Positions 21,893 through 40,036 of a stretch of DNA of 64,000 nt are shown here, piece after piece (the stretch's first letter is position 1; each line of letters begins with the position of its first letter). The translations under genes and the position numbers were made by a program. Under the pieces are notes generated by a model, which was not told where the DNA came from, made no database searches, and was given only the letters and a program-made list of their open reading frames with translations. This stretch comes from Oculina patagonica (lineage: Eukaryota): positions 33,790,001 through 33,854,000 of the forward strand of contig NC_135770.1 of NCBI RefSeq assembly GCF_052425735.1. The letters are read 5' to 3'.

Positions 21893-24800
21893 ATGTCTGG
21901 TTTCGAATACGCGTTTGTTTCTAAAGTTTCACAGGAATATTTGTGCCCGATATGTGAATGTCCTATGCGTGAACCAGTCCAGACGAAATGTGGACACAGA
22001 TTCTGCAAACACTGCTTGGAACAGTCCATGAAAAGGTAACGTAATTTAACTGTGAGATTTCCTTTCGGATGCCACATAATGTACTTTATTATGCATGCAT
22101 GCATATTCTTCCTTATTAGCTAATCCTTTATAACAAATGAACGGCAGTCATAAATGGAACAAGAGTTACAAAACTTAATATGTGCATTTTAATAAGCATA
22201 AGGCAAACATTCCAAATAAATACAACTGGCGTTTCAATATTTAAGGTCCTGGGGCCGGGTGGGGCATATTTATTCCCCTTGCCTTGTTCTGTAATAACAG
22301 GTGGCCCAGACGTTGTATTCGATCAACGTGACATATTGATGTTGGCGAATGCATTACGTTTTCAGCCGTAAGACAATGTATGAGAATGCTTCGAAAATTG
22401 CTCTAAATACTGCATGTGGAAAATAATTGAAATAAAATTGTAACTGCAGACCCGGCGTATCCAATTGTGAAGTACACAATAACTTACGTCTTAGCTATAT
22501 TTCTATTAGTTTTGAAGGTTATTTACCTGTCCAAAACTGTAAGAAAACCTCTGGATATGGTTTGTAATCGAGCAATGTTACTGTTTTGGACGGGCAACTT
22601 CCTTTTTCAGTTTCGATATAGCCACACAATGCAAAACAGCCACACAATAAATTTGCTTTCTTACTTTGGTTTTTGTATTGTATTGAAGTTTACAAGGCAA
22701 AATGGCTCAACTCTAAATGTTTAAATCCATAGATGGAGTCGGTTCTTGTGCACAAAAAGCCATTCGAGATTGAAATGCAAATGTGATGTAAATACCTTAT
22801 TGTTACTTTTTTTCGCGGGAACTTAATTTCGCGAAAATGGAACTCAAAACAGTTTGCCATGTTCCTGTGTTACAAAGTATAGCTTTTCTGACAACTGTAC
22901 CGAGATAATTTTGTAGTAAACTTACAGCAACGTTGATTAGTAGTAAAGTTTGCGTTGTTAATTTTAGCGAGAAACTTTTTTTTGGAGTCTTACATTTCGC
23001 GATTTTTGGAAAATCGCGAAATTCACAAAAATTAGGTCCCGCGAAAATAAGTAACAATAAGGTAATCTATTTTAAAGGGTCTATCTAGTAAAATGACAGA
23101 ATGAAAAGTGTTTTATTACTTTTTTTAAAAAAAAAAAATGGTGACCAAATTTTTTAAATTGGCTACCATTTTGGTATATTTAGGAGCCACTGGGAAGAAA
23201 ATTATACGCCCTGAATTACATGTACATTTTAACTTACCAGTAGTTTGTCTGTATCCCTCTCTGTCAGGAAGGAGAAAATTTGCCTATGCGATTTTAATTT
23301 TTTCTTAGAATCTATTCATGAATGCATATTCCAGTATACCCCTGTATGTTTCAACTGGCACCCATCAGTCAAACCATCTGTTATGATACAAATGAACACT
23401 CATCCATCTAGCCTTAAAGTTTCAAGTATGACAGTTATAATTCTATATTTAAAGGACCCTCGTCAGCCACACATTTGTTTTTGTTTACATACAAGAATTT
23501 TGGTGTTACATGTACATTTCATGCGAAAAGTGTCTAAACAAAAGAGATCACACTGTCAGACTGTAAAACTAATTAAGGTAATTAAACAGACGGTCAGTAA
23601 CACAATTAACTTACAGCAATGGAATATATGAGATTTGCTTCGCCATACATTTTTAGTCATAATTTTTAAGGCATCAAAAGTGGCAGACTAAAAGCCTGAC
23701 TAGGGTCAAGCTTTTAGCCAGGTGGGAGTCCAGGAGTCCCATGGATGGCCACTTTTCAGAGAAAATTAATATGAATAACTGTATACAGAGGTTTGTTTAG
23801 CAAATTTGGAAGTCTTTGGATACCTTTTCACTCAGAACTGCAAAAAAAACACCTTGCATGCTCCTCTAGGCCCTCCTATGGGTGCAAAGTTAGGCCCTAT
23901 ATAAATTTTGGACTCCTACTTTTTAAATCCTGGCTAAAGCCTTACTAGCTAGGGTCCTATAACGAACACTAACTATGACTTCAAAAATGATGTAAATAAA
24001 CATATGCACATGATTTTTAGGAAAAGAGAATGTCCCATTGACCGCCGAGCCCTTAAAGAACATTCTGCAAAGGTACATGTAAGACCACAATCCATTTTCT
24101 TCTCCATTGTAAACTCTCCTGTGGGTAATGATCATTAAGTTTGATGCGTTTTTACAGGATATATATCCTGATGTGGCAATTCAAAGAACAATTTTGGACT
24201 TTGTCATAAAGTGTCCTAACGAAAACTATGGTTGCAAATGGACTGGGGAGCTCAGAAGCATAGAGGTACATGTACAGTGCAACTTTAAATGTTTTGTCAT
24301 TTTATAAACATGAGCATACCTTTGTGTGTGTGTGTGTGTTGGGGGGTACTCTCTGAAAATTTTGGAGGGGTGTGTGGCAAGCTTCCAGGAACCCTTGTCG
24401 TGTTTCAAACCAAATTTTGTGGTTTCTCTATCCTATTTCAGACCTGATCCAAATATTGATACCCTAATACATGGCTGCAAATAATTTTTTTCACTTGAAT
24501 AGACAAATGTTCTTATAAGACATCTGCATTTTGGTCGGACAAAGCAAAATTGTGGTCTGACAGATTTTTATTCATTGTTGCCAAAAAATGATTTACACTG
24601 TATGATCAAAAAATTGTCCGGACATTATGCCCTACTACACTTGGGATTTCATCAGACATGAACAAATTTTGGTAGGCCAATGTCCAATGACTCCAGGCTG
24701 ACTGTTATTTGCAGCCCCGCTAATACCCTGCTTGTATTTCAGATAAGACCCCACCCAGGAACTGCTTCAGTGTAGTGATTTCTGTTGTTACATACCACCT

Positions 24801-27800
24801 ACATTGTACATATCAGTCACAAATTATATAAGGTGGAGGTACAATTTTATTTTTCAAACTGTGTGGTTCCAGGAAATGTTTATACTCACCCCCCTCCCCC
24901 CAACAGAAGGGTTAGGAAATTCCTGGGAGTGGGAAGGGTCTCAAAGGCCAAAAGCACTAAGAAAATGTATGAAGTTTAATTGGAATTTCCAGAGGGGTGG
25001 GGGTCTTAAGAAAAATCCCTTCTGGGGGGAGGGGGTATGGATAATTTATGGAACTACATAATGCAGATCTTTTCAAGGCAATTTTGGTGCCAAAAATCCA
25101 AATTAATTGAACAAACATTTCCCCAGTAATGACATTATGTGCCAAGTGGCACTCTAAGGGTTTTAAAGGTTAAAATTTAAGTGAAAGTACATGTACTATA
25201 TTGATAATATTGTATTTCAGACACATGAGCCAGATTGCAGTTTTGTAGGAGTGAAATGCACAAACAAGGATTGTGATGCCACTCCTTTGATGAAAGATCT
25301 GCAAAATCACGTGACTCATGAATGTCCTAAAAGGAAAGTCAAGTGTCTCTACTGTAAGGCAGTGTCCTTTATATGGTGCACAAGACAGGTAAATGACAAA
25401 ATATTGTGATTAAACAAAAGAGGATAGTGAATTTTCTTATGATGCTGATTCTTACGGTGGCCCACAACTGTCATGGCAAAACAAAAAGTCATGGCACTAC
25501 AAACTTTACCCACGTCTAAAATATTTTATTGATGGCAAAACAAAATTAACTCATGGCAAAACAAAGAAAAGGAGTTGGTCAGCTTTGGTACGCCGTGTAA
25601 CAGTAGAGGTCAGGCCAAACAAGGATGAGAGTTGATGAGAGTTGAGTAGACTGTCTCAGAATTATCATTTTTTCAAAACTTGTCACTCTTTTACCTGTTC
25701 ACCTGATAAAACAAGCAAATACATCAGTGAACTTTTACTTAAAAAGATACCGATGGTATGTTAAAGTCGAGACTGTGTTTACATGTAAGCCTAATTCACA
25801 GTCAACCTAGCCATTCAGTTATCTCCAGTTTCAGTTGCAGGAACCAATAAGGAGAACCTCTTCCCCCATCCCCCTGCCCTTTGCTGGGTACAGTCAACTC
25901 TCGTTATAGCGGACACGCTCGAGGCGTCGTTTAGTGTCCGTTATAGCGAGAGTCCGTAATAGCGGGACTCATTCCAGTCAAACTTCTTTTGCCGGGGATC
26001 TGGATTTTGTCCGTAATAGCGAGTGTCGGCAATAGCGGGGTGTCCGCAAGGCGAGAGTTGACTGTATGATGATAGCCCATTTTTGGCTTATCTCTTAGCA
26101 TTTAATTTTGTGATATGTTTTGTAAACCCTGGTGGTAAAGTACAAAACATGAATGTTGCCCACAATGCCAGGTAGAAGATAGATAGATGGATGGATAGAT
26201 AGTTTATTGATATTCTTACATGACAGTCTAAAAACTGAATTGCGTAAAAATTTACAAAGAGATTAATTATTAAAAATACAACTATTAAAATCTATTTTAA
26301 CTATATTAAAAATACAACTATTAAAATCTATTATAACTATATTAAAAATTTGCCATAGATGGAAAAAAGCTATTTTTAAAACGATTGGTTCAAGCCTTAA
26401 AAGGGTTAATTATATTCTGACAGTCTGGCAGTTTTAGCCGATTTCGAGTGTCGGTCTGTCAGCACATTCTTAATTATTATCTGGCAGTCTAGAGTCAAGA
26501 AAATTATGGTGGACTTGGTCTAAAAAAAATGGCGCTGTGTGGGCTGAACAACTCCCTATATAGACCCTTCGCTACCTCTCCAATCTATCACTGTCAAGGC
26601 ATGTCGTCATTGTCTCTGAAACAATAACAAGCTTCTGCAGCAGCAATGCACCTTTCCTAAATAGACAATATAGTACTGTTTATAAAAAGATGAATGAAGC
26701 AAGAGGTTCCAGAGAGATAAACCTGGAATGCTTGATCCATTCAACCCTTAGGCCACAACGCCTCGCTGAAGGCTACTGATAGTGGTTTACTACTTCTCTG
26801 ATAGAATCTGTTGATTATTTTAAGGTTCATTTTGACGTGTGCAAGAAATACCCAATGGAATGCCTTCAAAAATGTGGTGAACAAATACAAAGAGACAAGG
26901 TAGACTTGTAATTTTGTTTAATCATTAAACAGGGTCTAAAGTGGGAGTTGGGTGGGGGTGTGGCCGTAGCCAAGGGGTCTTGAAATTTTCAGAGCCATGC
27001 TTTGTTGCGGATCAGACCCCCTGAAGCCTAACCCCCTTGAAAATGTAATTTAAACACTTTTTAAAAGCCCCAATGTCCACATACAATCCTCTTGACTGAT
27101 TTCCATAATTTTCTTATGACATAGTTGGGTGAATTTCTTAAAAGATCGAGGATGCTCAGGCTACATTTTATGTTTTAATTGAATAGTTTTGCTTACAATT
27201 TGTCGTATCCAAAGTTACATTGTAACTTCATTTATAGGTTGTTTTCATTTTTTATTTATTTTACTTGGAGCGTTTTACAGTTTCGTTTATCATTTGTCCC
27301 ATCCAAGTTGTATAGTAGGTTGTATTGTAGGTCGACGAGGTTATGCTGTGTATATGGACTAGAAAATTCAATTTCATTTTTATTTCATTTTCTCGGAGCG
27401 TTTTCCTCTACCTTATTAATTGACAAAGTGTATTTTTTTACATGAGTTTGATTGTCTTCGAAGTATATAACCTTTATCGTCATTTTAAAATCCAGATGAA
27501 TGATCACATTGATAAAAGCTGCCCTCATACTAAACTGGAGTGCACGTATGCCCATGTTGGTTGCAAAGCTAAGGTACGTTATATGTTGACAGACTGTCTG
27601 TAATCACTATCACTTGTCGTTTCTGTGGATTTGCATGCAGCGAACAGCGGTAGGCAAATTTCGATATATGTATGTGAAGCCGAGTAAGAATTTTAATATT
27701 TATATCAAATTGGCATATTTTCCAGTTTTCTCAGGCTAGTCTAACAAAAAGTGAACAAACTCAACAGTATTTTGGCGAACGGTTTAATAGAGCTTTATCA

Positions 27801-28972
27801 TACGGTAGTATAATGCTTCATTTTACCTTCTTAGTCTGGAAAAATGAGATGTTCTTGGGTTTTAAATCACAATTATTTGATTTCATTGGCATTCTTTCTC
27901 TTCATTTCTTTTTGTCGAGTTTTTCCTTGCTAAAACAGTCTTATCTGACAGAGTTTTCACATTGGTCACGTTGTACCTTACTGTTTTATTAGGAAACTAC
28001 TATCGCAAAAATGATAATAGTTTTTATTGTTCTTTACTGTTATCAGATTTATTTATTTATTTTTAATTTAAGGTGCAACGAAAAGCCATTTCAGATCATC
28101 TAAAAAGAAACACAGAATCCCATTTGAAGCTGGCTTGTGAAAGACTTCAAGAGCTTCAAGATTCATCCACTCTCACCACAGCAAGTATTGAAGAAATGCA
28201 AACTGAAATTGTAACGGCCGTGAAAAAGATTAAAGAATTATCGGAAGAAGTTCTAAATAGCGAAGGTCTGCAGGACTCTTTATGTGATAAAATAGCTGCG
28301 ATAAATAAGAAGTTACCAAAATTTCAAAGTAGGGATGACGCAACTGACGGGAGGCTTTCTGCTCTAAAGACTGATGTTGTTACCATGAAGACTGAGGTGG
28401 CAGAACTCACAGAAGAGCTGCCTTCTACCGATGGAACACTTTCTGCCGTTCAAGATGACATAACTGAGTTGCAAAAATTGATCCCTAGAGTTGACAGTTT
28501 GCAAGGTCTACGTGGAGAAGTTGTTGGGGCGGTGAAAATAGAACTTCAAAAACTACTAGAATCAACAGTTACTAAATTGAATGAACGAGATCGCATAATG
28601 CTGGATGAGATCGAATCCCTGCAGACTGATATTGTCACCATAAAGACAGAGGCGAAAGAACTCACACAAGAGCTGTCTTCTACCGATGAAACACTTTTTG
28701 CCGTTCAAGATGACATAAATAAGTTGAAAAAACAAAATCGCATAATGCTGGATAAGATCGAGTTTATCAAATGGTCGTTAAACGCTCAGTTACAGGACCT
28801 TCGTGACAACTCTGCACGGGACAAGATGTTGTTGGACCAATATCGTTCCGAACAGAAAACGTTAAAAGATTTCGTATTTGTGATTTTTGGCGTCGCCATT
28901 TTGGTACTTTGTGTGCGTTACGGAATTTTTACTGACCTGTATTCGCGTATCTTGTCTATCTTAAAGAAGTAA
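21893..28972 (+). CDS. TRAF-derived gene 3: RING, 5 zinc fingers, coiled coil, C-terminal hydrophobic (putative TM) tail, no MATH domain; about 507 aa
   Basis: Exons 21893-22035, 24021-24072, 24158-24265, 25221-25388, 26825-26899, 27496-27573, 28073-28972; GT-AG and in frame (1524 nt). Ends KDFVFVIFGVAILVLCVRYGIFTDLYSRILSILKK*. Confidence 0.9.
22793..23064. mobile_element. TA-flanked MITE rich in TTTCGCG motifs (family with several copies in the window)
   Basis: TACCTTATTGTTACTT ... AAGTAACAATAAGGTA; related copies at 1-365, about 15010-15184 and 57269-57470. Confidence 0.75.
25891..26064. mobile_element. Tc1/pogo-type MITE (TA TSD)
   Basis: TA|CAGTCAACTCTCG ... CGAGAGTTGACTG|TA; decayed relatives near 3676-3850 and 4288-4446. 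Confidence 0.8.
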
Positions 28973-29179
28973 CAGTGATAACTTGGTACCCTTCACTTTC
29001 CAATAGTAATTTTTATTTATTCTAGTCGACCAAAAAGACGATCCGAATCAGTTTGTTGTTATACAAGTCGTTAGGGCAACGACAAATAAATTCAGTTATT
29101 TCGTGAAACTGGAGCCACTTAAGCCACTTTAAGAATGAGACATTTTATCAATATTTTATAGTACACAAAGGGCGAGGAG

Positions 29180-29780
29180 AGATAGATAGTTTATTAATAC
29201 AACTTCGCAACCCAAAGGTTGAATTATGCTATATTTACAAATTTATAAAAGCGATAAAAACTTATACGATAAAATGTAAAAAATTTAAAAAACTATACAA
29301 GAGTTGTTAAAAATTCAAACTTAAGTACATTAGAGACAGGATTAAACTGCCGTGACTTTCTGAGGTTATAACTACTAAAATTGCGTGGGGCAGTAAATTC
29401 CTCAGCCTACCGTCATTGTTCTCTAAAATAATGTTAAACAGTTTGTCCGTCAGGGCTTGCCTTCGACCTGACAGAGTGACTAGATTTGCCTAATTAAGCG
29501 CTTCTTCATACGAAACATACGGGAAAATGATGCGCATCGCCCTCTTTTGCACTGCTTCTAACTCACGAGAAAGATACGCAGGTAGACTTTCATTGAAAAC
29601 TGGCCATGGACAGGCATATTCAGTGATAGGGCGAATGCAGATACGATGGAACTGTACTAACTCGTTAGGACCTAGGCCTGAACGCTTTAACTGAGAAAGA
29701 CAATACGGCAGGCGTTTCCTAGCTTTCTTTTAAAACAACTTCAGTGATTTGGTGGTTCCATTTTTAATAGGTCGCTCGAA
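29180..29780 (-). mobile_element. Decayed 3' fragment of a CR1/L2-group LINE
   Basis: Minus-strand peptides CIRPITEYACP and EAVQKRAMRIIFPYVSYEEAL, typical of the post-RT region; similar tail near 26200-26500. Confidence 0.7.
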
Positions 29781-30260
29781 ACGGTCCTCCAAGAAACCAC
29801 CAGGCTTATAGAGTTGTGAGGCATGTGAGGCTTATAGAAATGTGTTACGTAGTATGATTTAGTTGTGGATGTGCGGCTAGGTCAATTCAGTCTCGATTCA
29901 TTGAACATACACTCATTTTTTTCTTTAAGTAGAAAAAGTAGTCGAACCAGTGATGTAAATTATGTAACTATGTGTGTGACCATGACGTTATAGAGGTTTG
30001 GCTGTGAAGGACAGGTGTATGTGTAAGCCTCTGATTATACTTGTTACTTTTCCTTGTTTAAAGATTAAATATTAACTGTACCTTCCAACTACTTAGTCTA
30101 AGGTACTGTGATCACTTTCTCTAATGACCTTCTTCTTTCATAAAGCGACAACAAACTGGGCTTCCTAAAGTGCCCGAAGTCTCGCCTGAATGCCTAGCCC
30201 CCCCCCCCCCCCCTTTTTTTCTGGTTGTTTAAATTGTAACGATTTTTATTTAGTTGTTCA

Positions 30261-34200: not shown

Positions 34201-37200
34201 TTTCAGACACATGAGCCTAGCTGCAGTTTTGTGGGTGTGAAATGCACTAACGAGGATTGTGAAGCTACTCCCCTGAGAAAAGATCTGCATAATCACGTGA
34301 CCAATAAATGTCCAAAAAGAAAAGTTGAGTGCTTCCACTGTAAAACATTCTTTAAATGGTACATGAAAGAGGTAAATGATTCTTTGTGATATAAACCAAG
34401 AGAACATTCATATTCTCTTGTATAAACAGAATATATCGATTTTTCTTATGAGGCTAATTGTTATGAAAGATGCTAAGGTTGCAACAGCCCATTAGATTAA
34501 TCAGTGCTGTTTGCCGTTATTTTTATATCTGTTTGTTTGTTTGTTTGTTTGTTTTTACTCATTATTTTTACAGGGACATTTTGACGTGTGTACGAAATAC
34601 CCGATGGCTTGCCTTCAAAGATGTGGTGAACATAAAATTCCAAGAGACAAGGTAGACCTGTAATTTTGTTCAAACATTTTAGTACAATTACCAAAAAAAG
34701 ATTAAGAACAAAAGTGCCGGTTACTGCCAGTATATTGAGTATCAAAAGCTGAAATAGAGTCGAAATACACTTCCGAACCCGTAAAATATAGTTTAAAGAA
34801 CATTTTCAATTTTATCGCGTGAGCAGAATAACCACAGTCAGCAGAAAACTGAGGCGTTAGTCAAAATACTGCAATGAACTGGCTTGGTCATGAAATAAAC
34901 AGCTTAAGTGCACAGTAAAATGCCAGGTGTGATGTCTGACTCAACCCCAATATGAAGGAACCTTATAAAGCACGCCATTTCTGGAAAAACGACTTGGCAA
35001 CTGATTCAAGGCTATGATATACCTGGGAGGTTAACTCTTTAATGTACTCGTTCATTGCGAATTGCGTTAATTACACTGTGGAAAATAACATTCTTGAGGC
35101 TGGTTCTCATAATCGCCCCGATCGTTTCTATCGCCTCGTCACTTCAAATTAAAAGGTTTTCTTGCGATCGGGGCGATTATATGAGAAAATTACACAGACG
35201 ATCGCTAACGTCTGCGGCGATTGGGGCGATCACGATCTTTTGGATCGCCCGTGGTCTATCCTTCTAGCTCTTCTTTCCCTTCTTCGCCGTAAAACTTCAA
35301 TAACTGAGAAGATAGGAGGCCACGAGCTTTGCTCTTTCATTGAAGGCTGCCATTGTGTTGCATCTAGAGCTAAAATGATTGTTTTTCGTAAATCTTCGCT
35401 CATACCACGCGATCGGGACGATCATATGAGAACCCCCGGTCGCTTCCAATCTCTTCGATCACCTAAGACCGTCTCAGAATTTGCAAAACGATCAATGCGA
35501 TAGAAACGATCGGGGCGATCATATGAAAACCAGGCTTTAATGAACAGTTTTGCGTCAAAGTAGAAGAAAACATTAAAATATAAAATAAAAAGGCGAAGTT
35601 TCAAAATTAGATTTTTAGTGAAGATAGGGTATAACAAAAACGTTCTTAAAATCAAGGTTGGCCTGTAAACATGAAAACATGCACGACAAAAATATTGAAA
35701 TTTTACAATTAGTAAATTTAAATTATTTTTTTCAATATACATTTTCTCCGCGCGAGCACCATTTTTTCCTATAATTATATTGGCTAAGAAGGACGTATTT
35801 TCTTACCGTGCACGAAGATAGCACATTATTCGTCAATTCTATGAACTCTAATGACGTGATGGGTAGATACTCGATCAGGGCGGAAGGAGAGAGCTCTGAC
35901 GCCCTGTACTCGAACAAGTGATTCATCGTTTTTGAACTACAGTATAACATTTCTCGTCATTTAATTTCTAGATGAATGAACACATTGAAAACAGTTGCCC
36001 TCATACTAAAGTGGAGTGCACGTTTGTCCATATTGGTTGCAAAGCTAAGGTACGATCTGGGGAGGAGGAGGGAACTCCCGTATGAAACGGACGGGGAAAC
36101 GGTCTACTCGCTCGGGGGTGTAAATTAAGGATATTGGCCTCATTAAGGGTTTTGATGGCCTGCGTTGCAGACGAACTAAACCCCGGTAGACTATATCGAG
36201 GATTCTGTGACACGTCCGGCTGCAACGCAGGCTAAGGTGTTCCCGGGGGAGGGGGGGGGTACTCAGGACTTCAAGTGACGGAGATGATCGAATAAGGGAA
36301 AAAATCAAGACCCAAAAAATCCCTAGGGCTTTCAACATAACCAAAAAGATCCCCACATAAAAAAATTGACCCCTCAAAAATCAACAGCGAAACACGTTTG
36401 TTTGTACTTTATTCGCAAAACTACCCAGCGAATGCACTACTGCCCGTCAAGACTGAACAGGCATGAAAAATGATATCTTTTAGGGGTAAAAAAGAGCTTA
36501 AGCCACATCCAAATTGGGTTTCCTTTAGAGGTTTTAATTCAACTGTTCTGATGAGCATCCCCATCCTTTTGATCTGGAATTCTCCCTGGAGGGTACGAAC
36601 GGTAGAAAGTAAATGTAGTGTACTTACTATTTCTAAGCTATCATTACAAACAGATGCATTAATTTCAGGGAGAAGGATATTAAATTTGCGATTTTTCTGT
36701 TTTTGTGGAGAGAGGTTCTCTTGTGTTTTGTTGATAGTGTTTTGTTCGCTTTACTTTTTTCATCGTAACTTCTGGTTCTTTTCAGGGCTTTGTTTTGTTA
36801 GAAACAGTATAAACCAATCATATTCGTTTCGTATATAGAAAATGGCATGCATTTTTTTCACTTCAGGTGCAACGAAGAGCCATTTCAGACCACGTGAAAA
36901 AATATTCAGAATTCCATTTGAAGCTGGCTTGTGAAAGACTTCAAGAGCTTCAGGTCTCATCTACTCTCACTGCAGCAAGTATTCAAGAAGTGCAAACTGA
37001 AACGGCTACCGCCATGAAAAAGATTAAAGAATTATCAGAAGCCGTTCTAAAAAGTGAAGGTCTGCAAGACTTGAGCGACAGGGTTGCTGAAAGAAAAGAG
37101 AAGTTACAAGAACCGCAAAGTAGGGAGGATGCATCTGACAGGCTCTCCTCGCTACAGGATGACGTTTTCTCTATAAAGAAGGAAGTGAAAGAGCTCTCGA

Positions 37201-37700
37201 GAAACGTGTCCGTCAATGCAAAGCTCTTGGAGCTTCAAGATGAAATAAATAATTTGCAAAAATTAATCCCCAGAGTTAACGTTGTTGCTGGGACCAACAA
37301 AAAACTTCAACAACAGCAAGAAGCGAATGCTAGTTTGAAGAAAGAAAACAGTGCTAATTTGCAAGTTCTACGGAAAGAAGTTGCTGGGACCAACACAAAA
37401 CTGCAGAAACTCAATGAAGAACTCAATGAAGCAATTATTAGAATGGAGGAGCGAAACTTTGATGCAAACAGTTGCAGTTTGGTATTGTCAGAGATAGATT
37501 CTGCCAAATTGGAATTACGACGTCTTCGTGAAGACACTGAAAGGAATAGGAACTTGGACAAATTTCGTATCGATCGCTGGGAAATGTTTAGTGAAATCAT
37601 ACTGACTAGCATTTTTTGCATAGCTGTTTACTTAGTTTGTTTTCGATTTGGAACAGTCGCTGATTTGTATTCGCTTATCATGTCTATCTTCTATAAGTAA
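31220..37700 (+). CDS. TRAF-derived gene 4, paralog of gene 3: RING, 5 zinc fingers, coiled coil, C-terminal hydrophobic tail, no MATH; about 485 aa
   Basis: Exons 31220-31362, 32220-32271, 32854-32961, 34207-34371, 34574-34651, 35972-36049, 36867-37700; GT-AG and in frame (1458 nt). Ends EIILTSIFCIAVYLVCFRFGTVADLYSLIMSIFYK*. Confidence 0.9.
33752..33969. mobile_element. Short TTAA-flanked MITE (Kolobok-like)
   Basis: TTAA|AGGAGCTATGT ... ACGTAGCTTCT|TTAA. Confidence 0.55.
35096..35538. mobile_element. TIR MITE rich in CGATCG motifs (Harbinger-like)
   Basis: GCTGGTTCTCATAATCGCCCCGATCGTTTCTATCGC ... GCGATAGAAACGATCGGGGCGATCATATGAAAACCAG. Confidence 0.7.
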
Positions 37701-37865
37701 CAATGATGGCTTACTACCCTTGCTTTTCCACCGGAAAAATTAACAATATGGAAGCTACAATCTGTCCTAAGAAACTGCCAAACTTAGACAATCCACTTTT
37801 TCCAAGTCCTACTAAATGTTTTGGGTACAATGATTTATCTATCACTCAGATCTTAAACTGGAATG

Positions 37866-38043
37866 CACGGTGGCCTAATGGTTAATGTGCTGGACTCCGG
37901 ATCGAGCGGTCCAGGTTCGAACCTCGCCTTAGGCACTGCGTTGTGTTCTTAGGACACTTTACCCTAATAGTACTTCTCTCCACTTAGGTGTATAAATGGG
38001 TACCGGCAATTTACTGCTGGAGGGTAACCCTGCGATCGACTAC
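37866..38043 (+). mobile_element. tRNA-derived SINE (second family)
   Basis: A box TGGCCTAATGG, B box GGTTCGAACC, body GGTGTATAAATGGGTACCGGC; antisense relative near 9230-9420. Confidence 0.75.
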
Positions 38044-40036
38044 TTTGGTAGTCTCCGGACATTTTCGGAAGTCGACAGAAATTTTCGGCAGTCTTAGGGA
38101 ATCGTCGTAAAATGGCCGAAAACTTCTTGGCGAAGTAAATTTCGCAATTTTTATTTAGTTATGTTTTTGTGTAGGTAATCAAATGGGCCGAGAAAAATTG
38201 AGGATTAATATCACGCGTGTTTTCAGAAATTTTGTCCTCTATGTTATGAGAATTATTACATACTAAATTTCATATTTTACAACACTTGCATTAGCTTACA
38301 ACCTCCAAGCGATCAGTTGACTATTTTCCGGGTCATATCGAAAAACAGGTCCCAGCCCCATGACGCTAGGCTATGACTGCGTCATAGACTAGATATGAGA
38401 GTTTGTATGGGAACTTAACATCATGTATAGCAGTTCTTTTCAAATATTAACTGCAGAAAGCATTGCAAATGTCGCCAAACATTCTATTACTTACAACGGG
38501 GATTGTGAATCTTGCATAAATGAAGGAGAAGGGGCATGCTTACCAGTCCACTCCAGTCTGAAACGGTATACAACTAAACTCTAAAACAGTTTTCACTAGA
38601 AACGTTTGCAAAGGAAAAGCCATGCATGCCCGAGAATACATTAAATGACAATAATTTAAGTGCTAATGAACCTTTAATTTATCTAGCTTACTGAATACAT
38701 TATATGTAAATTAGATCTTTTGTGTGAATATTTATGTTATGTTTTTCTTTTCCTTTTTTTTTTCCTGTAAATATTTGTGTAATGTATTGTAATTTGATGT
38801 AAATAAATGCTGTTAATAAAAAATAAAAAAAATAAAAAAAACTCTTTAGTCGAAGATTGGGTAGCAAATTTTACGTTTTCTTGATCTGAGACGGGGTAGG
38901 GGTTTTGACCCCAGCGGAGTACCCCACCCAATTTTTCTAGGTGCCTCACCTACCGTGGAATACGAGGAGACGTGTCACTGCATCGTGCTCGCACTACATT
39001 GTCTTGTGTGTTAACATATGATTTTGTTTCTACTTATGTCCTCGTCTTACGTCCCGGCTAGTGTGTAAAGAGCCGTGATTTTTGTCGCTACCACACGTGG
39101 CATGACATGCCGAGCAACACGAACCCTCGTGGGTGACCACCTTTTAAATGTAAAGTAAAACGGGCAACATTTCTTGCAACAGTGTTGCTTTGCAAGTTAA
39201 ATAGGTTTGTTACGCCAGGGACCGCGCAGAGGAAGCAAAAAATTGTTAGTTCAGTAATAAGGGACAAAAGTTACTGGCAAAGTAGACGCGCAGATAAGTT
39301 TAGTACAAACACTGTCATAAATTAGTTATAAGTCGCTATAATTATCGAAAAAATTTTCAGTTGTAGCCTTGTGCTAGTACAGGTTTATGTCTTTTAAATG
39401 GCTTCTTTTTGCAAGCGGACCTCTCAGGAAAACGAAAACGTAATTGGTTCAAAAACCGGGCTGGAAAAAATAGGTCAGCAAGGGTGACACCCACCCCCCC
39501 CCCCCGCCCGCTAATGTCGCTCACGCGTCCGTCTTTAGTCCCCCCCCCCCCACTCTAAAACTTGCTGCGCGGGCCCTGTTGCAATACCCGTTGCAATACT
39601 GGTGCTAAAACCTGCAAAGTGTTGGGAAAGTGCAATTTGAATATTAGTTTCATTTACAAACAACAGAAAGGTAATTTCTGTCAACAATTTATTGTACGCA
39701 CATCTTGATGTAAGATTTGCATTGCTGTTATTAAGCTTATTTTTTTATTTATTTTATACTTGCATAATTTGCATAGATACTTGTACATTACTATGGCAAC
39801 TGAATTCGAATCCTATTATATACTTGAGGCCAAGTTTTTATCTTGAAAATAATAAAAGCCTGTACATTATACGCATTGTGATGCCATCTTTGATAAGGAA
39901 TGTTCATTTTGTTGGAAGAAGGAAGAAACAAAATATTGCATTGTTCTTGGTAAAGGAAAAAAAAAAACAAGCGATAGCCCCTTACATCGTTTTGGCTGTC
40001 GTCCTTAGGGTAAAAAACAACTCACGGTCATGTATT

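What the first reader, a model, noticed from the sequence alone, without database searches (positions are those of the whole stretch)
28073..28972. TRAF paralog with the MATH domain replaced by a C-terminal membrane anchor (gene 3)
Seen: exons 1-6 and the start of exon 7 (VQRKAISDHL...HLKLAC) match the neighbouring TRAFs, but about 240 aa of heptad-rich sequence then ends in FVFVIFGVAILVLCV-RYGIFTDLYSRILSILKK*. No MATH motif follows before gene 4. Established: TRAF1-6 are soluble and reach receptors through MATH; TRAF7 uses WD40. Inference: this is a tail-anchored RING E3 fixed on an organelle membrane (mitochondrion, ER or possibly symbiosome). It could signal without a receptor or capture canonical TRAFs through its coiled coil.
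Basis: partly seen in the sequence, partly recalled or inferred. Interest (0 to 1): 0.85.

Follow-up and report, generated by a model that had tools for sequence, protein, structure and literature searches.

The report
Membrane-anchored coral TRAF lacking MATH
This coral gene encodes a TRAF-type immune signalling ligase that has lost its receptor-binding MATH domain and ends in a membrane-spanning helix, and it belongs to an apparently undescribed group of membrane-embedded TRAFs in stony corals.

Summary
Window 28073-28972 is the last exon of a seven-exon Oculina patagonica gene whose product is identical to a 507-aa RefSeq model named "TRAF6-like". It has a RING, TRAF zinc fingers, about 265 aa of coiled coil, one hydrophobic helix (aa 475-494), 13 more residues and a stop. 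RNA contigs from a close relative confirm four introns. They also run straight across the stop, with no splice to a MATH exon.

- A decayed, out-of-frame MATH fragment of about 40 codons (28956-29081) follows the stop.
- The anchor did not replace MATH. Relatives in other corals, including Montipora RefSeq models, carry coiled coil, then the same transmembrane helix, then MATH, and where the DNA was read all of this lies in one exon. Gene 3 arose from such a gene by a deletion of about 90 codons plus a stop. Its last residues are a recycled MATH strand.

Tail-anchored versions exist in Acropora, Montipora and Oculina, and MATH was lost at least three times. The RING and zinc-finger exons are under purifying selection (dN/dS 0.23 against gene 4).

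Best reading: a functional, trimeric, tail-anchored TRAF-type E3 or adaptor. The organelle and the activity are untested. I found no paper describing membrane-embedded TRAFs. It is a new variant of a known kind, of moderately high interest.

The parts
21893..22035 (+). Exon 1 (CDS start): RING finger, C3HC3D pattern
   Evidence: Exact spliced reconstruction of P0001. Pfam RING aa 18-56. Closest solved structure is the human TRAF6 RING-ZnF, 3HCS, E 1.2e-25.
24021..24072 (+). Exon 2: end of the RING (CP.D)
   Evidence: RNA joint 24072>24158 with GT..AG.
24158..24265 (+). Exon 3: first TRAF zinc finger
   Evidence: RNA joint 24265>25221.
25221..25388 (+). Exon 4: zinc fingers
   Evidence: RNA joint 25388>26825.
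26825..26899 (+). Exon 5: zf-TRAF
   Evidence: RNA joint 26899>27496. Pfam zf-TRAF.
27496..27573 (+). Exon 6: zf-TRAF
28073..28870 (+). Exon 7, coiled-coil part (aa 209-474)
   Evidence: ORF. Only coiled-coil-type Pfam noise. AF2 helices 222-409 and 416-506. Predicted parallel in-register trimer.
28368..28732 (+). In-frame internal duplication within the coiled coil: 110-nt copies at 28368-28477 and 28623-28732, 87% identical, spacing 255 nt
   Evidence: The ortholog P0002 and the RNA contigs carry a further repeat.
28871..28930 (+). Transmembrane helix, aa 475-494
   Evidence: Hydropathy, coordinates, continuous helix in AF2 with pLDDT about 80. Homologous in position to the helix of the TM-MATH relatives.
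28931..28972 (+). 13-residue C-terminal tail plus the stop (28970-28972). From 28947 onward the DNA is homologous to a MATH beta strand.
   Evidence: blastn of g3 against P0007 MATH DNA starts at 28947, which is P0007 aa 379. In the paralog at L017:2229-2990 the remnant stays in frame after the stop.
28956..29081 (+). Decayed MATH remnant in the 3' UTR: +1 frame, two internal stops, matches mid-MATH only
36867..37700 (+). Last exon of gene 4, the only paralog of this type in the genome. It has the same helix, tail and stop, followed by a MATH remnant.

Best explanation
Gene 3 encodes a functional, membrane-anchored member of the TRAF lineage.

Shown or computed: the RING and TRAF zinc fingers are intact, a coiled coil of about 265 aa follows, and the protein ends in one transmembrane helix 13 residues from the C-terminus.

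Inferred: with no signal peptide and the helix at the extreme end, it should be inserted post-translationally as a tail-anchored protein. The RING, zinc fingers and coiled coil would face the cytosol as a parallel trimer standing on the membrane. High helix hydrophobicity and a tail charge of only +2 favour the ER or a secretory endomembrane as the site.

Origin (shown): it derives from a coral-specific TRAF in which a transmembrane helix sits between the coiled coil and the MATH domain. A deletion of about 90 codons joined the helix to a mid-MATH strand, and a stop followed. The rest of MATH is decaying in the 3' UTR. The event predates the gene 3 / gene 4 duplication.

Function (inferred): without MATH it cannot dock on receptor tails. 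It most likely acts as a fixed ubiquitin-ligase or adaptor platform. Its input would be its own abundance or co-assembly through the coiled coil with other TRAFs.
For: - Architecture.
- Transcription and 3' end: four GT..AG joints, empty introns, and contigs colinear across the stop.
- Helix homology: the motif R-D-K-M ... L-K-[DN]-F is conserved right up to the start of the helix in both tail-type and TM-MATH proteins.
- Deletion and remnant.
- Gene still under selection after MATH loss: g3 against g4, exons 1-6 dN/dS 0.23 at dS 0.50, all zinc ligands kept.
- Anchor retained: every tail-type relative keeps a Kyte-Doolittle 19-residue mean of at least 1.7 despite low sequence identity. Neutral drift at 25% divergence keeps an open frame with a mean of at least 1.7 in only 27% of simulations per lineage.
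- Recurrence: full-length RefSeq tail-anchored models exist in Acropora digitifera, A. millepora, A. muricata and Montipora foliosa. A 1758-nt intron-less contig encodes a complete 427-aa copy.
- Independent losses: at least three changes of state on the tree. The AU test rejects a single tail-type clade, p = 0.006, with the group chosen post hoc.
- Trimer: ipSAE 0.61 against a best control of 0.01. That mark was reached by 21 of 30 proteins solved as pairs of one chain and by 0 of 23 solved as single chains. The runs share at least 93% of contacts and the partner's pLDDT is at least 80. The calibration used two copies, not three, and a pass may reflect memory of solved coiled coils.
Against: - Exon 7 evolves fast. 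dN/dS is 0.70 against the ortholog P0002 and about 1.2 in the distal coiled coil. The helix plus tail gives 0.65-0.88, but on very few sites.
- The coiled-coil DNA is no better conserved than the dead MATH remnant, both about 74% identical to P0007.
- The RefSeq model of gene 4 splices out before its helix.
- One relative's gene-4 copy (P0048) has a frameshift in the helix, and some relatives (for example P0029) end without one.
- The helix contains an Arg.
- No membrane-topology predictor, localisation experiment or E3 assay was available.
- The RNA evidence comes from assembled contigs of a relative, or of a divergent allele (7-10% different in the coiled coil). It is not raw reads of this individual.
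Confidence: 0.6

Rival explanations
1. It is membrane-anchored but works as an inhibitor or decoy, not as a signalling ligase. This 'headless' trimer would co-assemble through its coiled coil with TM-MATH or canonical TRAFs, or soak up E2 enzymes, and so damp signalling.
For: MATH, the input domain, is gone. The coiled coil is homologous to that of the TM-MATH relatives, with 45-53% identity over about 260 aa. Truncated forms arise repeatedly beside full forms in the same gene cluster, for example L018, L017:2229-2990 and P0007 in tandem. From established knowledge, truncated TRAFs lacking one end act as dominant negatives in vertebrate experiments.
Against: No TM-MATH partner of this clade was found in the Oculina genome. 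The RING and zinc fingers are under purifying selection, which a pure decoy would not need. Hetero-assembly was not tested.
Confidence: 0.2
2. It is an evolutionary relic. After MATH was deleted the gene kept being transcribed, but the tail has no role of its own. The helix is merely inherited and the copy is drifting towards loss.
For: The MATH remnant is still recognisable in the 3' UTR. dN/dS is 0.55-0.70 in exon 7. Gene 4's RefSeq isoform drops the helix, and P0048 has a frameshift. Many cluster members in this genome carry in-frame stops.
Against: dN/dS is 0.23 across the RING and ZnF exons over dS 0.5 since the loss. All seven exons and their splice sites are intact and used. The same end-state was reached at least three times and is kept across three Acropora species and Montipora. 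The hydrophobic anchor is kept in all tail-type lineages.
Confidence: 0.15
3. The hydrophobic end is not a membrane anchor. It would be a greasy extension of the trimeric coiled coil, buried in the bundle or driving aggregation, and the protein would be soluble.
For: AF2 draws one unbroken helix from 416 to 506. The predicted trimer interface continues with the same heptad register to residue 490. There is an Arg inside the segment.
Against: Twenty consecutive residues with a Kyte-Doolittle mean of 2.54 and a negative summed insertion free energy. Position is conserved while sequence is not, and charged flanks are present; established knowledge holds this to be typical of anchors. In the second clade the N-side flank is K-R-G-R-K. 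Structure predictors ignore membranes.
Confidence: 0.07
4. A MATH-bearing isoform exists through splicing out of exon 7 or read-through.
For: A MATH fragment lies right after the stop. Gene 4 does use an internal donor in its last exon.
Against: The fragment is about 40 codons, out of frame, holds two stops and covers only HMM positions 71-112 of 165. Nothing else MATH-like lies before gene 4. No RNA joint leaves exon 7, and contigs cross the stop colinearly.
Confidence: 0.02

Closest known systems
Human TRAF6 (RING plus zinc fingers, PDB 3HCS)
   Same: The N-terminal 163 aa align at E 1.2e-25 with all RING zinc ligands conserved. There are zf-TRAF repeats and a coiled coil predicted to form a parallel trimer.
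   Different: There is no MATH/TRAF-C domain. The coiled coil is about 265 aa rather than about 60. There is a C-terminal transmembrane helix. The two residues after the first Cys-Pro-Ile-Cys of the RING differ from TRAF6, so Ubc13 use is open (from memory, not tested).
Coral TM-MATH TRAFs, for example Montipora capricornis XP_068751774.1 (P0020) and the unnamed P0012, P0007 and P0204
   Same: They share the clade (100/99 support against canonical Oculina TRAFs) and the RING-ZnF-coiled-coil-helix order. Where genomic DNA was read (L015 for P0012, L017 for P0007), the whole C-terminal part is one exon. The helix starts after the same conserved motif.
   Different: They keep a MATH domain of about 165 aa after the helix. 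Gene 3 has lost it. These proteins are themselves undescribed and are labelled only 'TRAF5-like'.
Acroporid tail-anchored TRAF models (A. digitifera XP_015780387.1, A. millepora XP_029189345.2, A. muricata XP_067027019.1, M. foliosa 'TRAF6-like X1')
   Same: The architecture is identical: RING, zf-TRAF, coiled coil, then a helix 2-6 residues from the end.
   Different: They form a separate clade (99/98) with a shorter coiled coil and a different tail. They represent an independent MATH loss and have no recycled MATH strand.
TRAF7
   Same: It is a TRAF-family RING and zinc-finger protein without MATH (established knowledge).
   Different: TRAF7 replaces MATH with WD40 repeats and is soluble. 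Gene 3 has no replacement domain, only the anchor.
Tail-anchored innate-immune adaptors and membrane RING ligases (MAVS, TRAF3IP3/T3JAM, MARCH5, RNF185)
   Same: By inference they share the working principle: a cytosolic signalling or E3 module held on an organelle by one C-terminal helix. MAVS and TRAF3IP3 bring TRAFs to membranes (established knowledge, recalled from memory).
   Different: There is no sequence relationship. In those systems the TRAF is recruited, whereas here the TRAF itself carries the anchor.

Membership tests
TRAF family | N-terminal RING finger (C3HC3D) | tested here: met
   Pfam RING models cover aa 18-56. Alignment to the TRAF6 RING shows all ligands conserved.
TRAF family | TRAF-type zinc fingers | tested here: met
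   PF02176 scores 70.6 bits against a cut-off of 27, in two stretches.
TRAF family | Coiled coil (TRAF-N) forming a parallel trimer | tested here: inconclusive
   AF2 gives long helices. The three-copy model scores 0.61 against a best control of 0.01. The mark was reached by 21 of 30 proteins solved as pairs of one chain and by 0 of 23 solved as single chains, but the calibration was on two copies and the pass may be memory of solved coiled coils.
TRAF family | C-terminal MATH / TRAF-C domain | tested here: not met
   Pfam finds no MATH. Only a non-coding remnant of about 40 codons is present. By descent it is a TRAF. By domain definition it is a MATH-less TRAF derivative.
Tail-anchored membrane proteins | No N-terminal signal peptide or other hydrophobic segment | tested here: met
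   The best Kyte-Doolittle 19-residue mean outside the C-terminus is 0.69.
Tail-anchored membrane proteins | Single transmembrane helix within about 30 residues of the C-terminus | tested here: met
   The helix is aa 475-494 of 507, with a Kyte-Doolittle mean of 2.54 and a Hessa sum of -0.69.
Tail-anchored membrane proteins | Post-translational insertion (GET/TRC40, EMC or spontaneous) with the N-terminus in the cytosol | not testable with these tools
   This needs in vitro insertion or cell-biological assays.
Coral TM-bearing TRAF clade (defined here) | Hydrophobic helix at the end of the coiled coil, after the conserved L-K-[DN]-F context, and grouping with TM-MATH proteins in the tree | tested here: met

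The most novel reading that the evidence does not exclude
Stony corals possess a family of single-pass, type II transmembrane TRAFs. The RING, zinc fingers and coiled coil would be cytosolic and the MATH domain would lie on the other side of the membrane, so receptor and adaptor would be one polypeptide. Gene 3 would be one of at least three independently derived 'headless' versions that keep only the anchor. These may act as constitutive or regulatory partners of the full-length forms. A second, unrelated-looking TM-MATH clade, present in Oculina at G000:C11 (L025), suggests the design arose more than once.
Probability: 0.4. Interest if true: 0.8.

Novelty: new variant of a known kind. Interest (0 to 1): 0.62.

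Why it matters
In every studied animal, TRAFs are soluble adaptors that reach membranes only by binding receptors or anchored partners such as MAVS. A lineage in which the TRAF itself is embedded in a membrane changes how signal input must work. That holds both for forms with MATH beyond the helix and for forms, repeatedly derived, with the helix as the very end.

The family also offers a natural series (canonical, TM-MATH, tail-anchored) for asking what MATH and membrane proximity each contribute to TRAF activation.

Corals have greatly expanded TRAF, TNFR and TLR repertoires (at least 67 MATH matches in this genome), and these are linked to symbiosis and bleaching. An organelle-fixed E3 of this family is a concrete candidate to localise. 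The proteins are already in RefSeq under generic 'TRAF5/6-like' names, so the finding is cheap to follow up.

Tried and rejected
1. Splicing from exon 7 to a MATH exon. No such RNA joint exists. The only joints inside exon 7 are a 99-nt 'goes back' and a replaced stretch, which match the relative's extra coiled-coil repeat.

2. The helix itself as a frame-shifted MATH segment. One tblastn extension in L019 suggested this. I rejected it because DNA homology to MATH starts only at 28947, and because the protein context is conserved up to the start of the helix in both types.

3. The 33 hydrophobic or amphipathic C-terminal residues as a helical hairpin broken at R-Y-G. AF2 gives one continuous helix. 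This is weak evidence, since the predictor ignores membranes.

4. A TM-MATH paralog of this clade in Oculina. None was found. Only genes 3 and 4 match the long coiled coil.

5. Literature. Seven full-text searches found nothing on membrane-anchored or transmembrane TRAFs and nothing citing the RefSeq accessions. The one candidate paper does not treat the subject. The library lacks most subscription journals, so absence is not proof.

6. ESM Atlas look-alikes returned only generic RING plus zf-TRAF clusters.

7. Range beyond Scleractinia. Word-index searches returned only Acropora, Montipora, Oculina, Desmophyllum and unnamed coral-metagenome proteins. Their sensitivity is limited, so the range is not settled.

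8. A conserved Cys pair flanking MATH in the TM-MATH proteins of this clade, as a sign of an exoplasmic disulfide. It is enriched (5 of 14 TM-bearing against 1 of 44 others), but the five are close relatives and no coordinates were available to measure distances.

Full report
**What is there**

The window is a TRAF gene cluster of the stony coral Oculina patagonica (names). ORF 28073-28972 on the + strand is real. A spliced reconstruction with GT..AG at every intron reproduces, residue for residue, the 507-aa RefSeq model P0001 ('TNF receptor-associated factor 6-like'). Its exons are 21893-22035, 24021-24072, 24158-24265, 25221-25388, 26825-26899, 27496-27573 and 28073-28972.

- Pfam finds a RING (aa 18-56) and two zf-TRAF stretches above the curated cut-off. 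It finds no MATH, and in exon 7 it finds only coiled-coil-type noise.
- The closest solved structure is the human TRAF6 RING-zinc-finger fragment (3HCS, E 1.2e-25), with all RING ligands conserved.
- Exon 7 encodes about 265 aa of helix. It includes a recent in-frame duplication: 110-nt copies, 87% identical, 255 nt apart.
- The single hydrophobic segment is aa 475-494 (window 28871-28930). Its Kyte-Doolittle 19-residue mean is 2.54 and its summed Hessa scale is -0.69 kcal/mol. The next best segment in the whole protein scores 0.69.
- Thirteen residues and the stop follow. This is the formal architecture of a tail-anchored protein.

**Transcript evidence**

Four public runs of one study hold spliced contigs.
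- There are GT..AG joints at 24072>24158, 24265>25221, 25388>26825 and 26899>27496. These are exactly the model's introns 2-5.
- Depth is zero in unique intron bins.
- Contigs of 629-744 nt run colinear from 28725 to 29209, straight across the stop at 28970-28972.
- No joint leaves exon 7 for a downstream exon.
- The contigs differ from the window by 7-10% in the proximal coiled coil but by 1.5% or less in the 3' part. They also carry a 99-nt extra repeat like the ortholog P0002, so they come from a close relative or a divergent allele.
- These are assembled contigs, not raw reads, so they show presence and structure but not expression level.

**The MATH remnant and the origin of the tail**

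- In the +1 frame from 28966 the sequence reads as the middle of a MATH domain, with two stops inside.
- It was found by tblastn with two relatives, by blastn against a relative's MATH DNA (g3 28947-29044, E 5e-11), and by a MATH HMM I built from 84 sequences (28956-29081, HMM positions 71-112 of 165, i-E 2.8e-4).
- Nothing else MATH-like lies before gene 4.

The key comparison is with homologues of exon 7.
- Many are open frames that end in a similar hydrophobic tail.
- P0007, P0012 and P0016/P0204, read here from genomic contigs, and the full-length Montipora RefSeq models P0020, P0175 and P0178, carry coiled coil, then a hydrophobic helix, then a complete MATH domain.
- In L015 and L017 this whole arrangement is a single uninterrupted exon.
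- The protein context before the helix (R-D-K-M ... L-K-[DN]-F) is conserved in both kinds, so the helices are homologous.
- In gene 3, DNA homology to MATH resumes at 28947 (aa 500), which equals residue 379 of P0007. P0007's helix ends near residue 283. About 90 codons are therefore missing.
- In the paralog at L017:2229-2990 the remnant is still in frame after the stop. That shows the last residues of the tail are a recycled MATH beta strand.
- Gene 4 (last exon 36867-37700) has the same junction, tail and remnant.

The anchor therefore did not replace MATH. MATH was deleted from a protein that already had the helix, before genes 3 and 4 duplicated.

**Distribution and recurrence**

- In the Oculina genome only genes 3 and 4 have this long coiled coil plus helix. 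The other MATH matches I inspected are canonical.
- Elsewhere, tail-anchored full-length models exist in Acropora digitifera, A. millepora, A. muricata and Montipora foliosa. A 1758-nt contig encodes a complete 427-aa copy without introns, so it is an mRNA.
- In another coral assembly, two tail-type genes and one TM-MATH gene lie in tandem, followed by a minus-strand canonical TRAF. This mirrors the Oculina order.
- Trees built on the coiled coil alone give three supported clades: an acroporid tail-anchored clade; a clade with Montipora TM-MATH plus other tail types; and the clade that holds Oculina genes 3 and 4 plus TM-MATH proteins. At least three changes of state are needed.
- An AU test rejects a single origin of all tail types (p = 0.006). 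The grouping was chosen after seeing a tree, so this is supportive, not conclusive.
- Three tail types of other lineages stop 2-6 residues after the helix with no remnant downstream.

**Is it functional?**

For function:
- Since the g3/g4 split, which postdates the MATH loss, the RING and zinc-finger exons show dN/dS 0.23 at dS 0.50, with all ligands kept.
- All splice sites are intact and four of the six introns are seen spliced in the RNA contigs.
- The hydrophobic anchor persists in every tail-type lineage although its sequence varies. In a neutral simulation at 25% divergence this is kept only 27% of the time per lineage.

Against, or at least cautionary:
- Exon 7 evolves fast. dN/dS is 0.70 against the ortholog and about 1.2 in the distal coiled coil. 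The helix has too few sites to judge.
- The RefSeq model of gene 4 uses an internal donor (37481|GT) that removes its helix.
- One relative's gene-4 copy has a frameshift in the helix.

**Structure predictions**

- AF2 with a 25-sequence alignment gives a confident RING (pLDDT 85-93) and one continuous helix from 416 to 506 through the anchor (pLDDT about 80). This argues weakly against a hairpin.
- Three copies of aa 380-507 are modelled as a parallel, in-register trimer with a heptad interface up to residue 490.
  - The score is 0.61 against a best control of 0.01.
  - The mark was reached by 21 of 30 proteins solved as pairs of one chain and by 0 of 23 solved as single chains.
  - The runs share at least 93% of contacts and the partner's pLDDT is at least 80.
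  - The calibration used two copies, and coiled coils may score from memory.

**Mechanism, with odds**

Most likely (0.6): a trimeric, tail-anchored TRAF-type E3 or adaptor with its catalytic end in the cytosol. The site is probably ER-derived membrane, judged by the hydrophobic helix and the +2 tail. That judgement applies published rules for tail-anchor targeting, recalled from memory. Lacking MATH, it cannot read receptor tails.

Rivals:
- An anchored decoy (0.2).
- A drifting relic (0.15).
- A soluble protein with a greasy end (0.07).
- A hidden MATH isoform (0.02).

**Comparison with the known, and novelty**

By descent it is a TRAF. By domain definition it fails the MATH criterion, as TRAF7 does, but TRAF7 has WD40 repeats and is soluble. 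It works like tail-anchored adaptors such as MAVS or TRAF3IP3, which bring TRAFs to membranes. Here the TRAF carries its own anchor.

Seven literature searches and one paper read turned up no description of transmembrane or tail-anchored TRAFs, or of these accessions. The sequences themselves have been public under generic names, so I rate the finding a new variant of a known kind.

The broader and more novel possibility is that the ancestral form is a type II membrane TRAF with MATH on the far side of the membrane. The single-exon architecture supports it. So does a second TM-MATH clade with a K-R-G-R-K flank on the N side of the helix. It remains an inference.

Noticed in passing
window 36867-37700 and 37481-38200: Gene 4 is a second tail-type copy with the same helix, tail and stop, followed by a MATH remnant. 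Its RefSeq model (P0013, 405 aa) instead uses an internal donor at 37481|GT and an acceptor near 38175. That removes the helix and ends the protein seven residues later. It may be an anchored/soluble isoform pair.
   Followed up: partly
G000:C11:6541021-6542076 (L025:982-2037); copy on C1285 (L026): This is a second kind of TM-bearing TRAF last exon in Oculina. A hydrophobic helix flanked by K-R-G-R-K sits in the middle of the coiled coil. About 95 aa more coiled coil and an intact canonical MATH follow. Relatives are P0078, P0096, P0104, P0109, P0116 and P0119.
   Followed up: partly
P0012, P0204, P0020, P0022, P0175, P0178 (relatives, not in the window): The TM-MATH proteins of the gene-3 clade share a Cys 4-5 residues before the first MATH strand and a Cys in the last 2-8 residues. 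The canonical Oculina TRAFs I inspected mostly lack both. This may be a disulfide and would fit an exoplasmic MATH. No coordinates were available to check.
   Followed up: partly
window 28073-28730 against 28725-29900: The RNA contigs differ from the window by 7-10% in the proximal coiled coil but by 0-1.5% in the 3' end and UTR, and they carry an extra 99-nt repeat. The coiled coil may be hypervariable between alleles or sister species, or reshaped by duplication or conversion.
   Followed up: no
window 24394-26363 (intron 3 and mainly intron 4 of gene 3), peak at 25773-26166: Repeat sequence with summed contig depth in the thousands in all four RNA runs, with many loose ends and odd joints. 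It is probably an abundantly transcribed transposable-element family.
   Followed up: no
G000:C13 about 33.57-34.10 Mb, and other contigs: There are at least 67 MATH matches in the genome, densely clustered around this window. Several have in-frame stops, which suggests a large and partly decaying TRAF expansion.
   Followed up: no
L017:10001-11344 (P0007), another coral assembly: The TM-MATH gene next to two tail-type genes lacks the last roughly 45 residues of MATH. The domain is therefore eroding there too, by a different truncation.
   Followed up: no
P0015 (Desmophyllum pertusum OS493_031595): The deposited model looks chimeric. MATH-like N-terminal sequence is fused upstream of zinc fingers and this clade's coiled coil, and it ends before any helix. 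It is probably a gene-prediction merge of neighbours.
   Followed up: no
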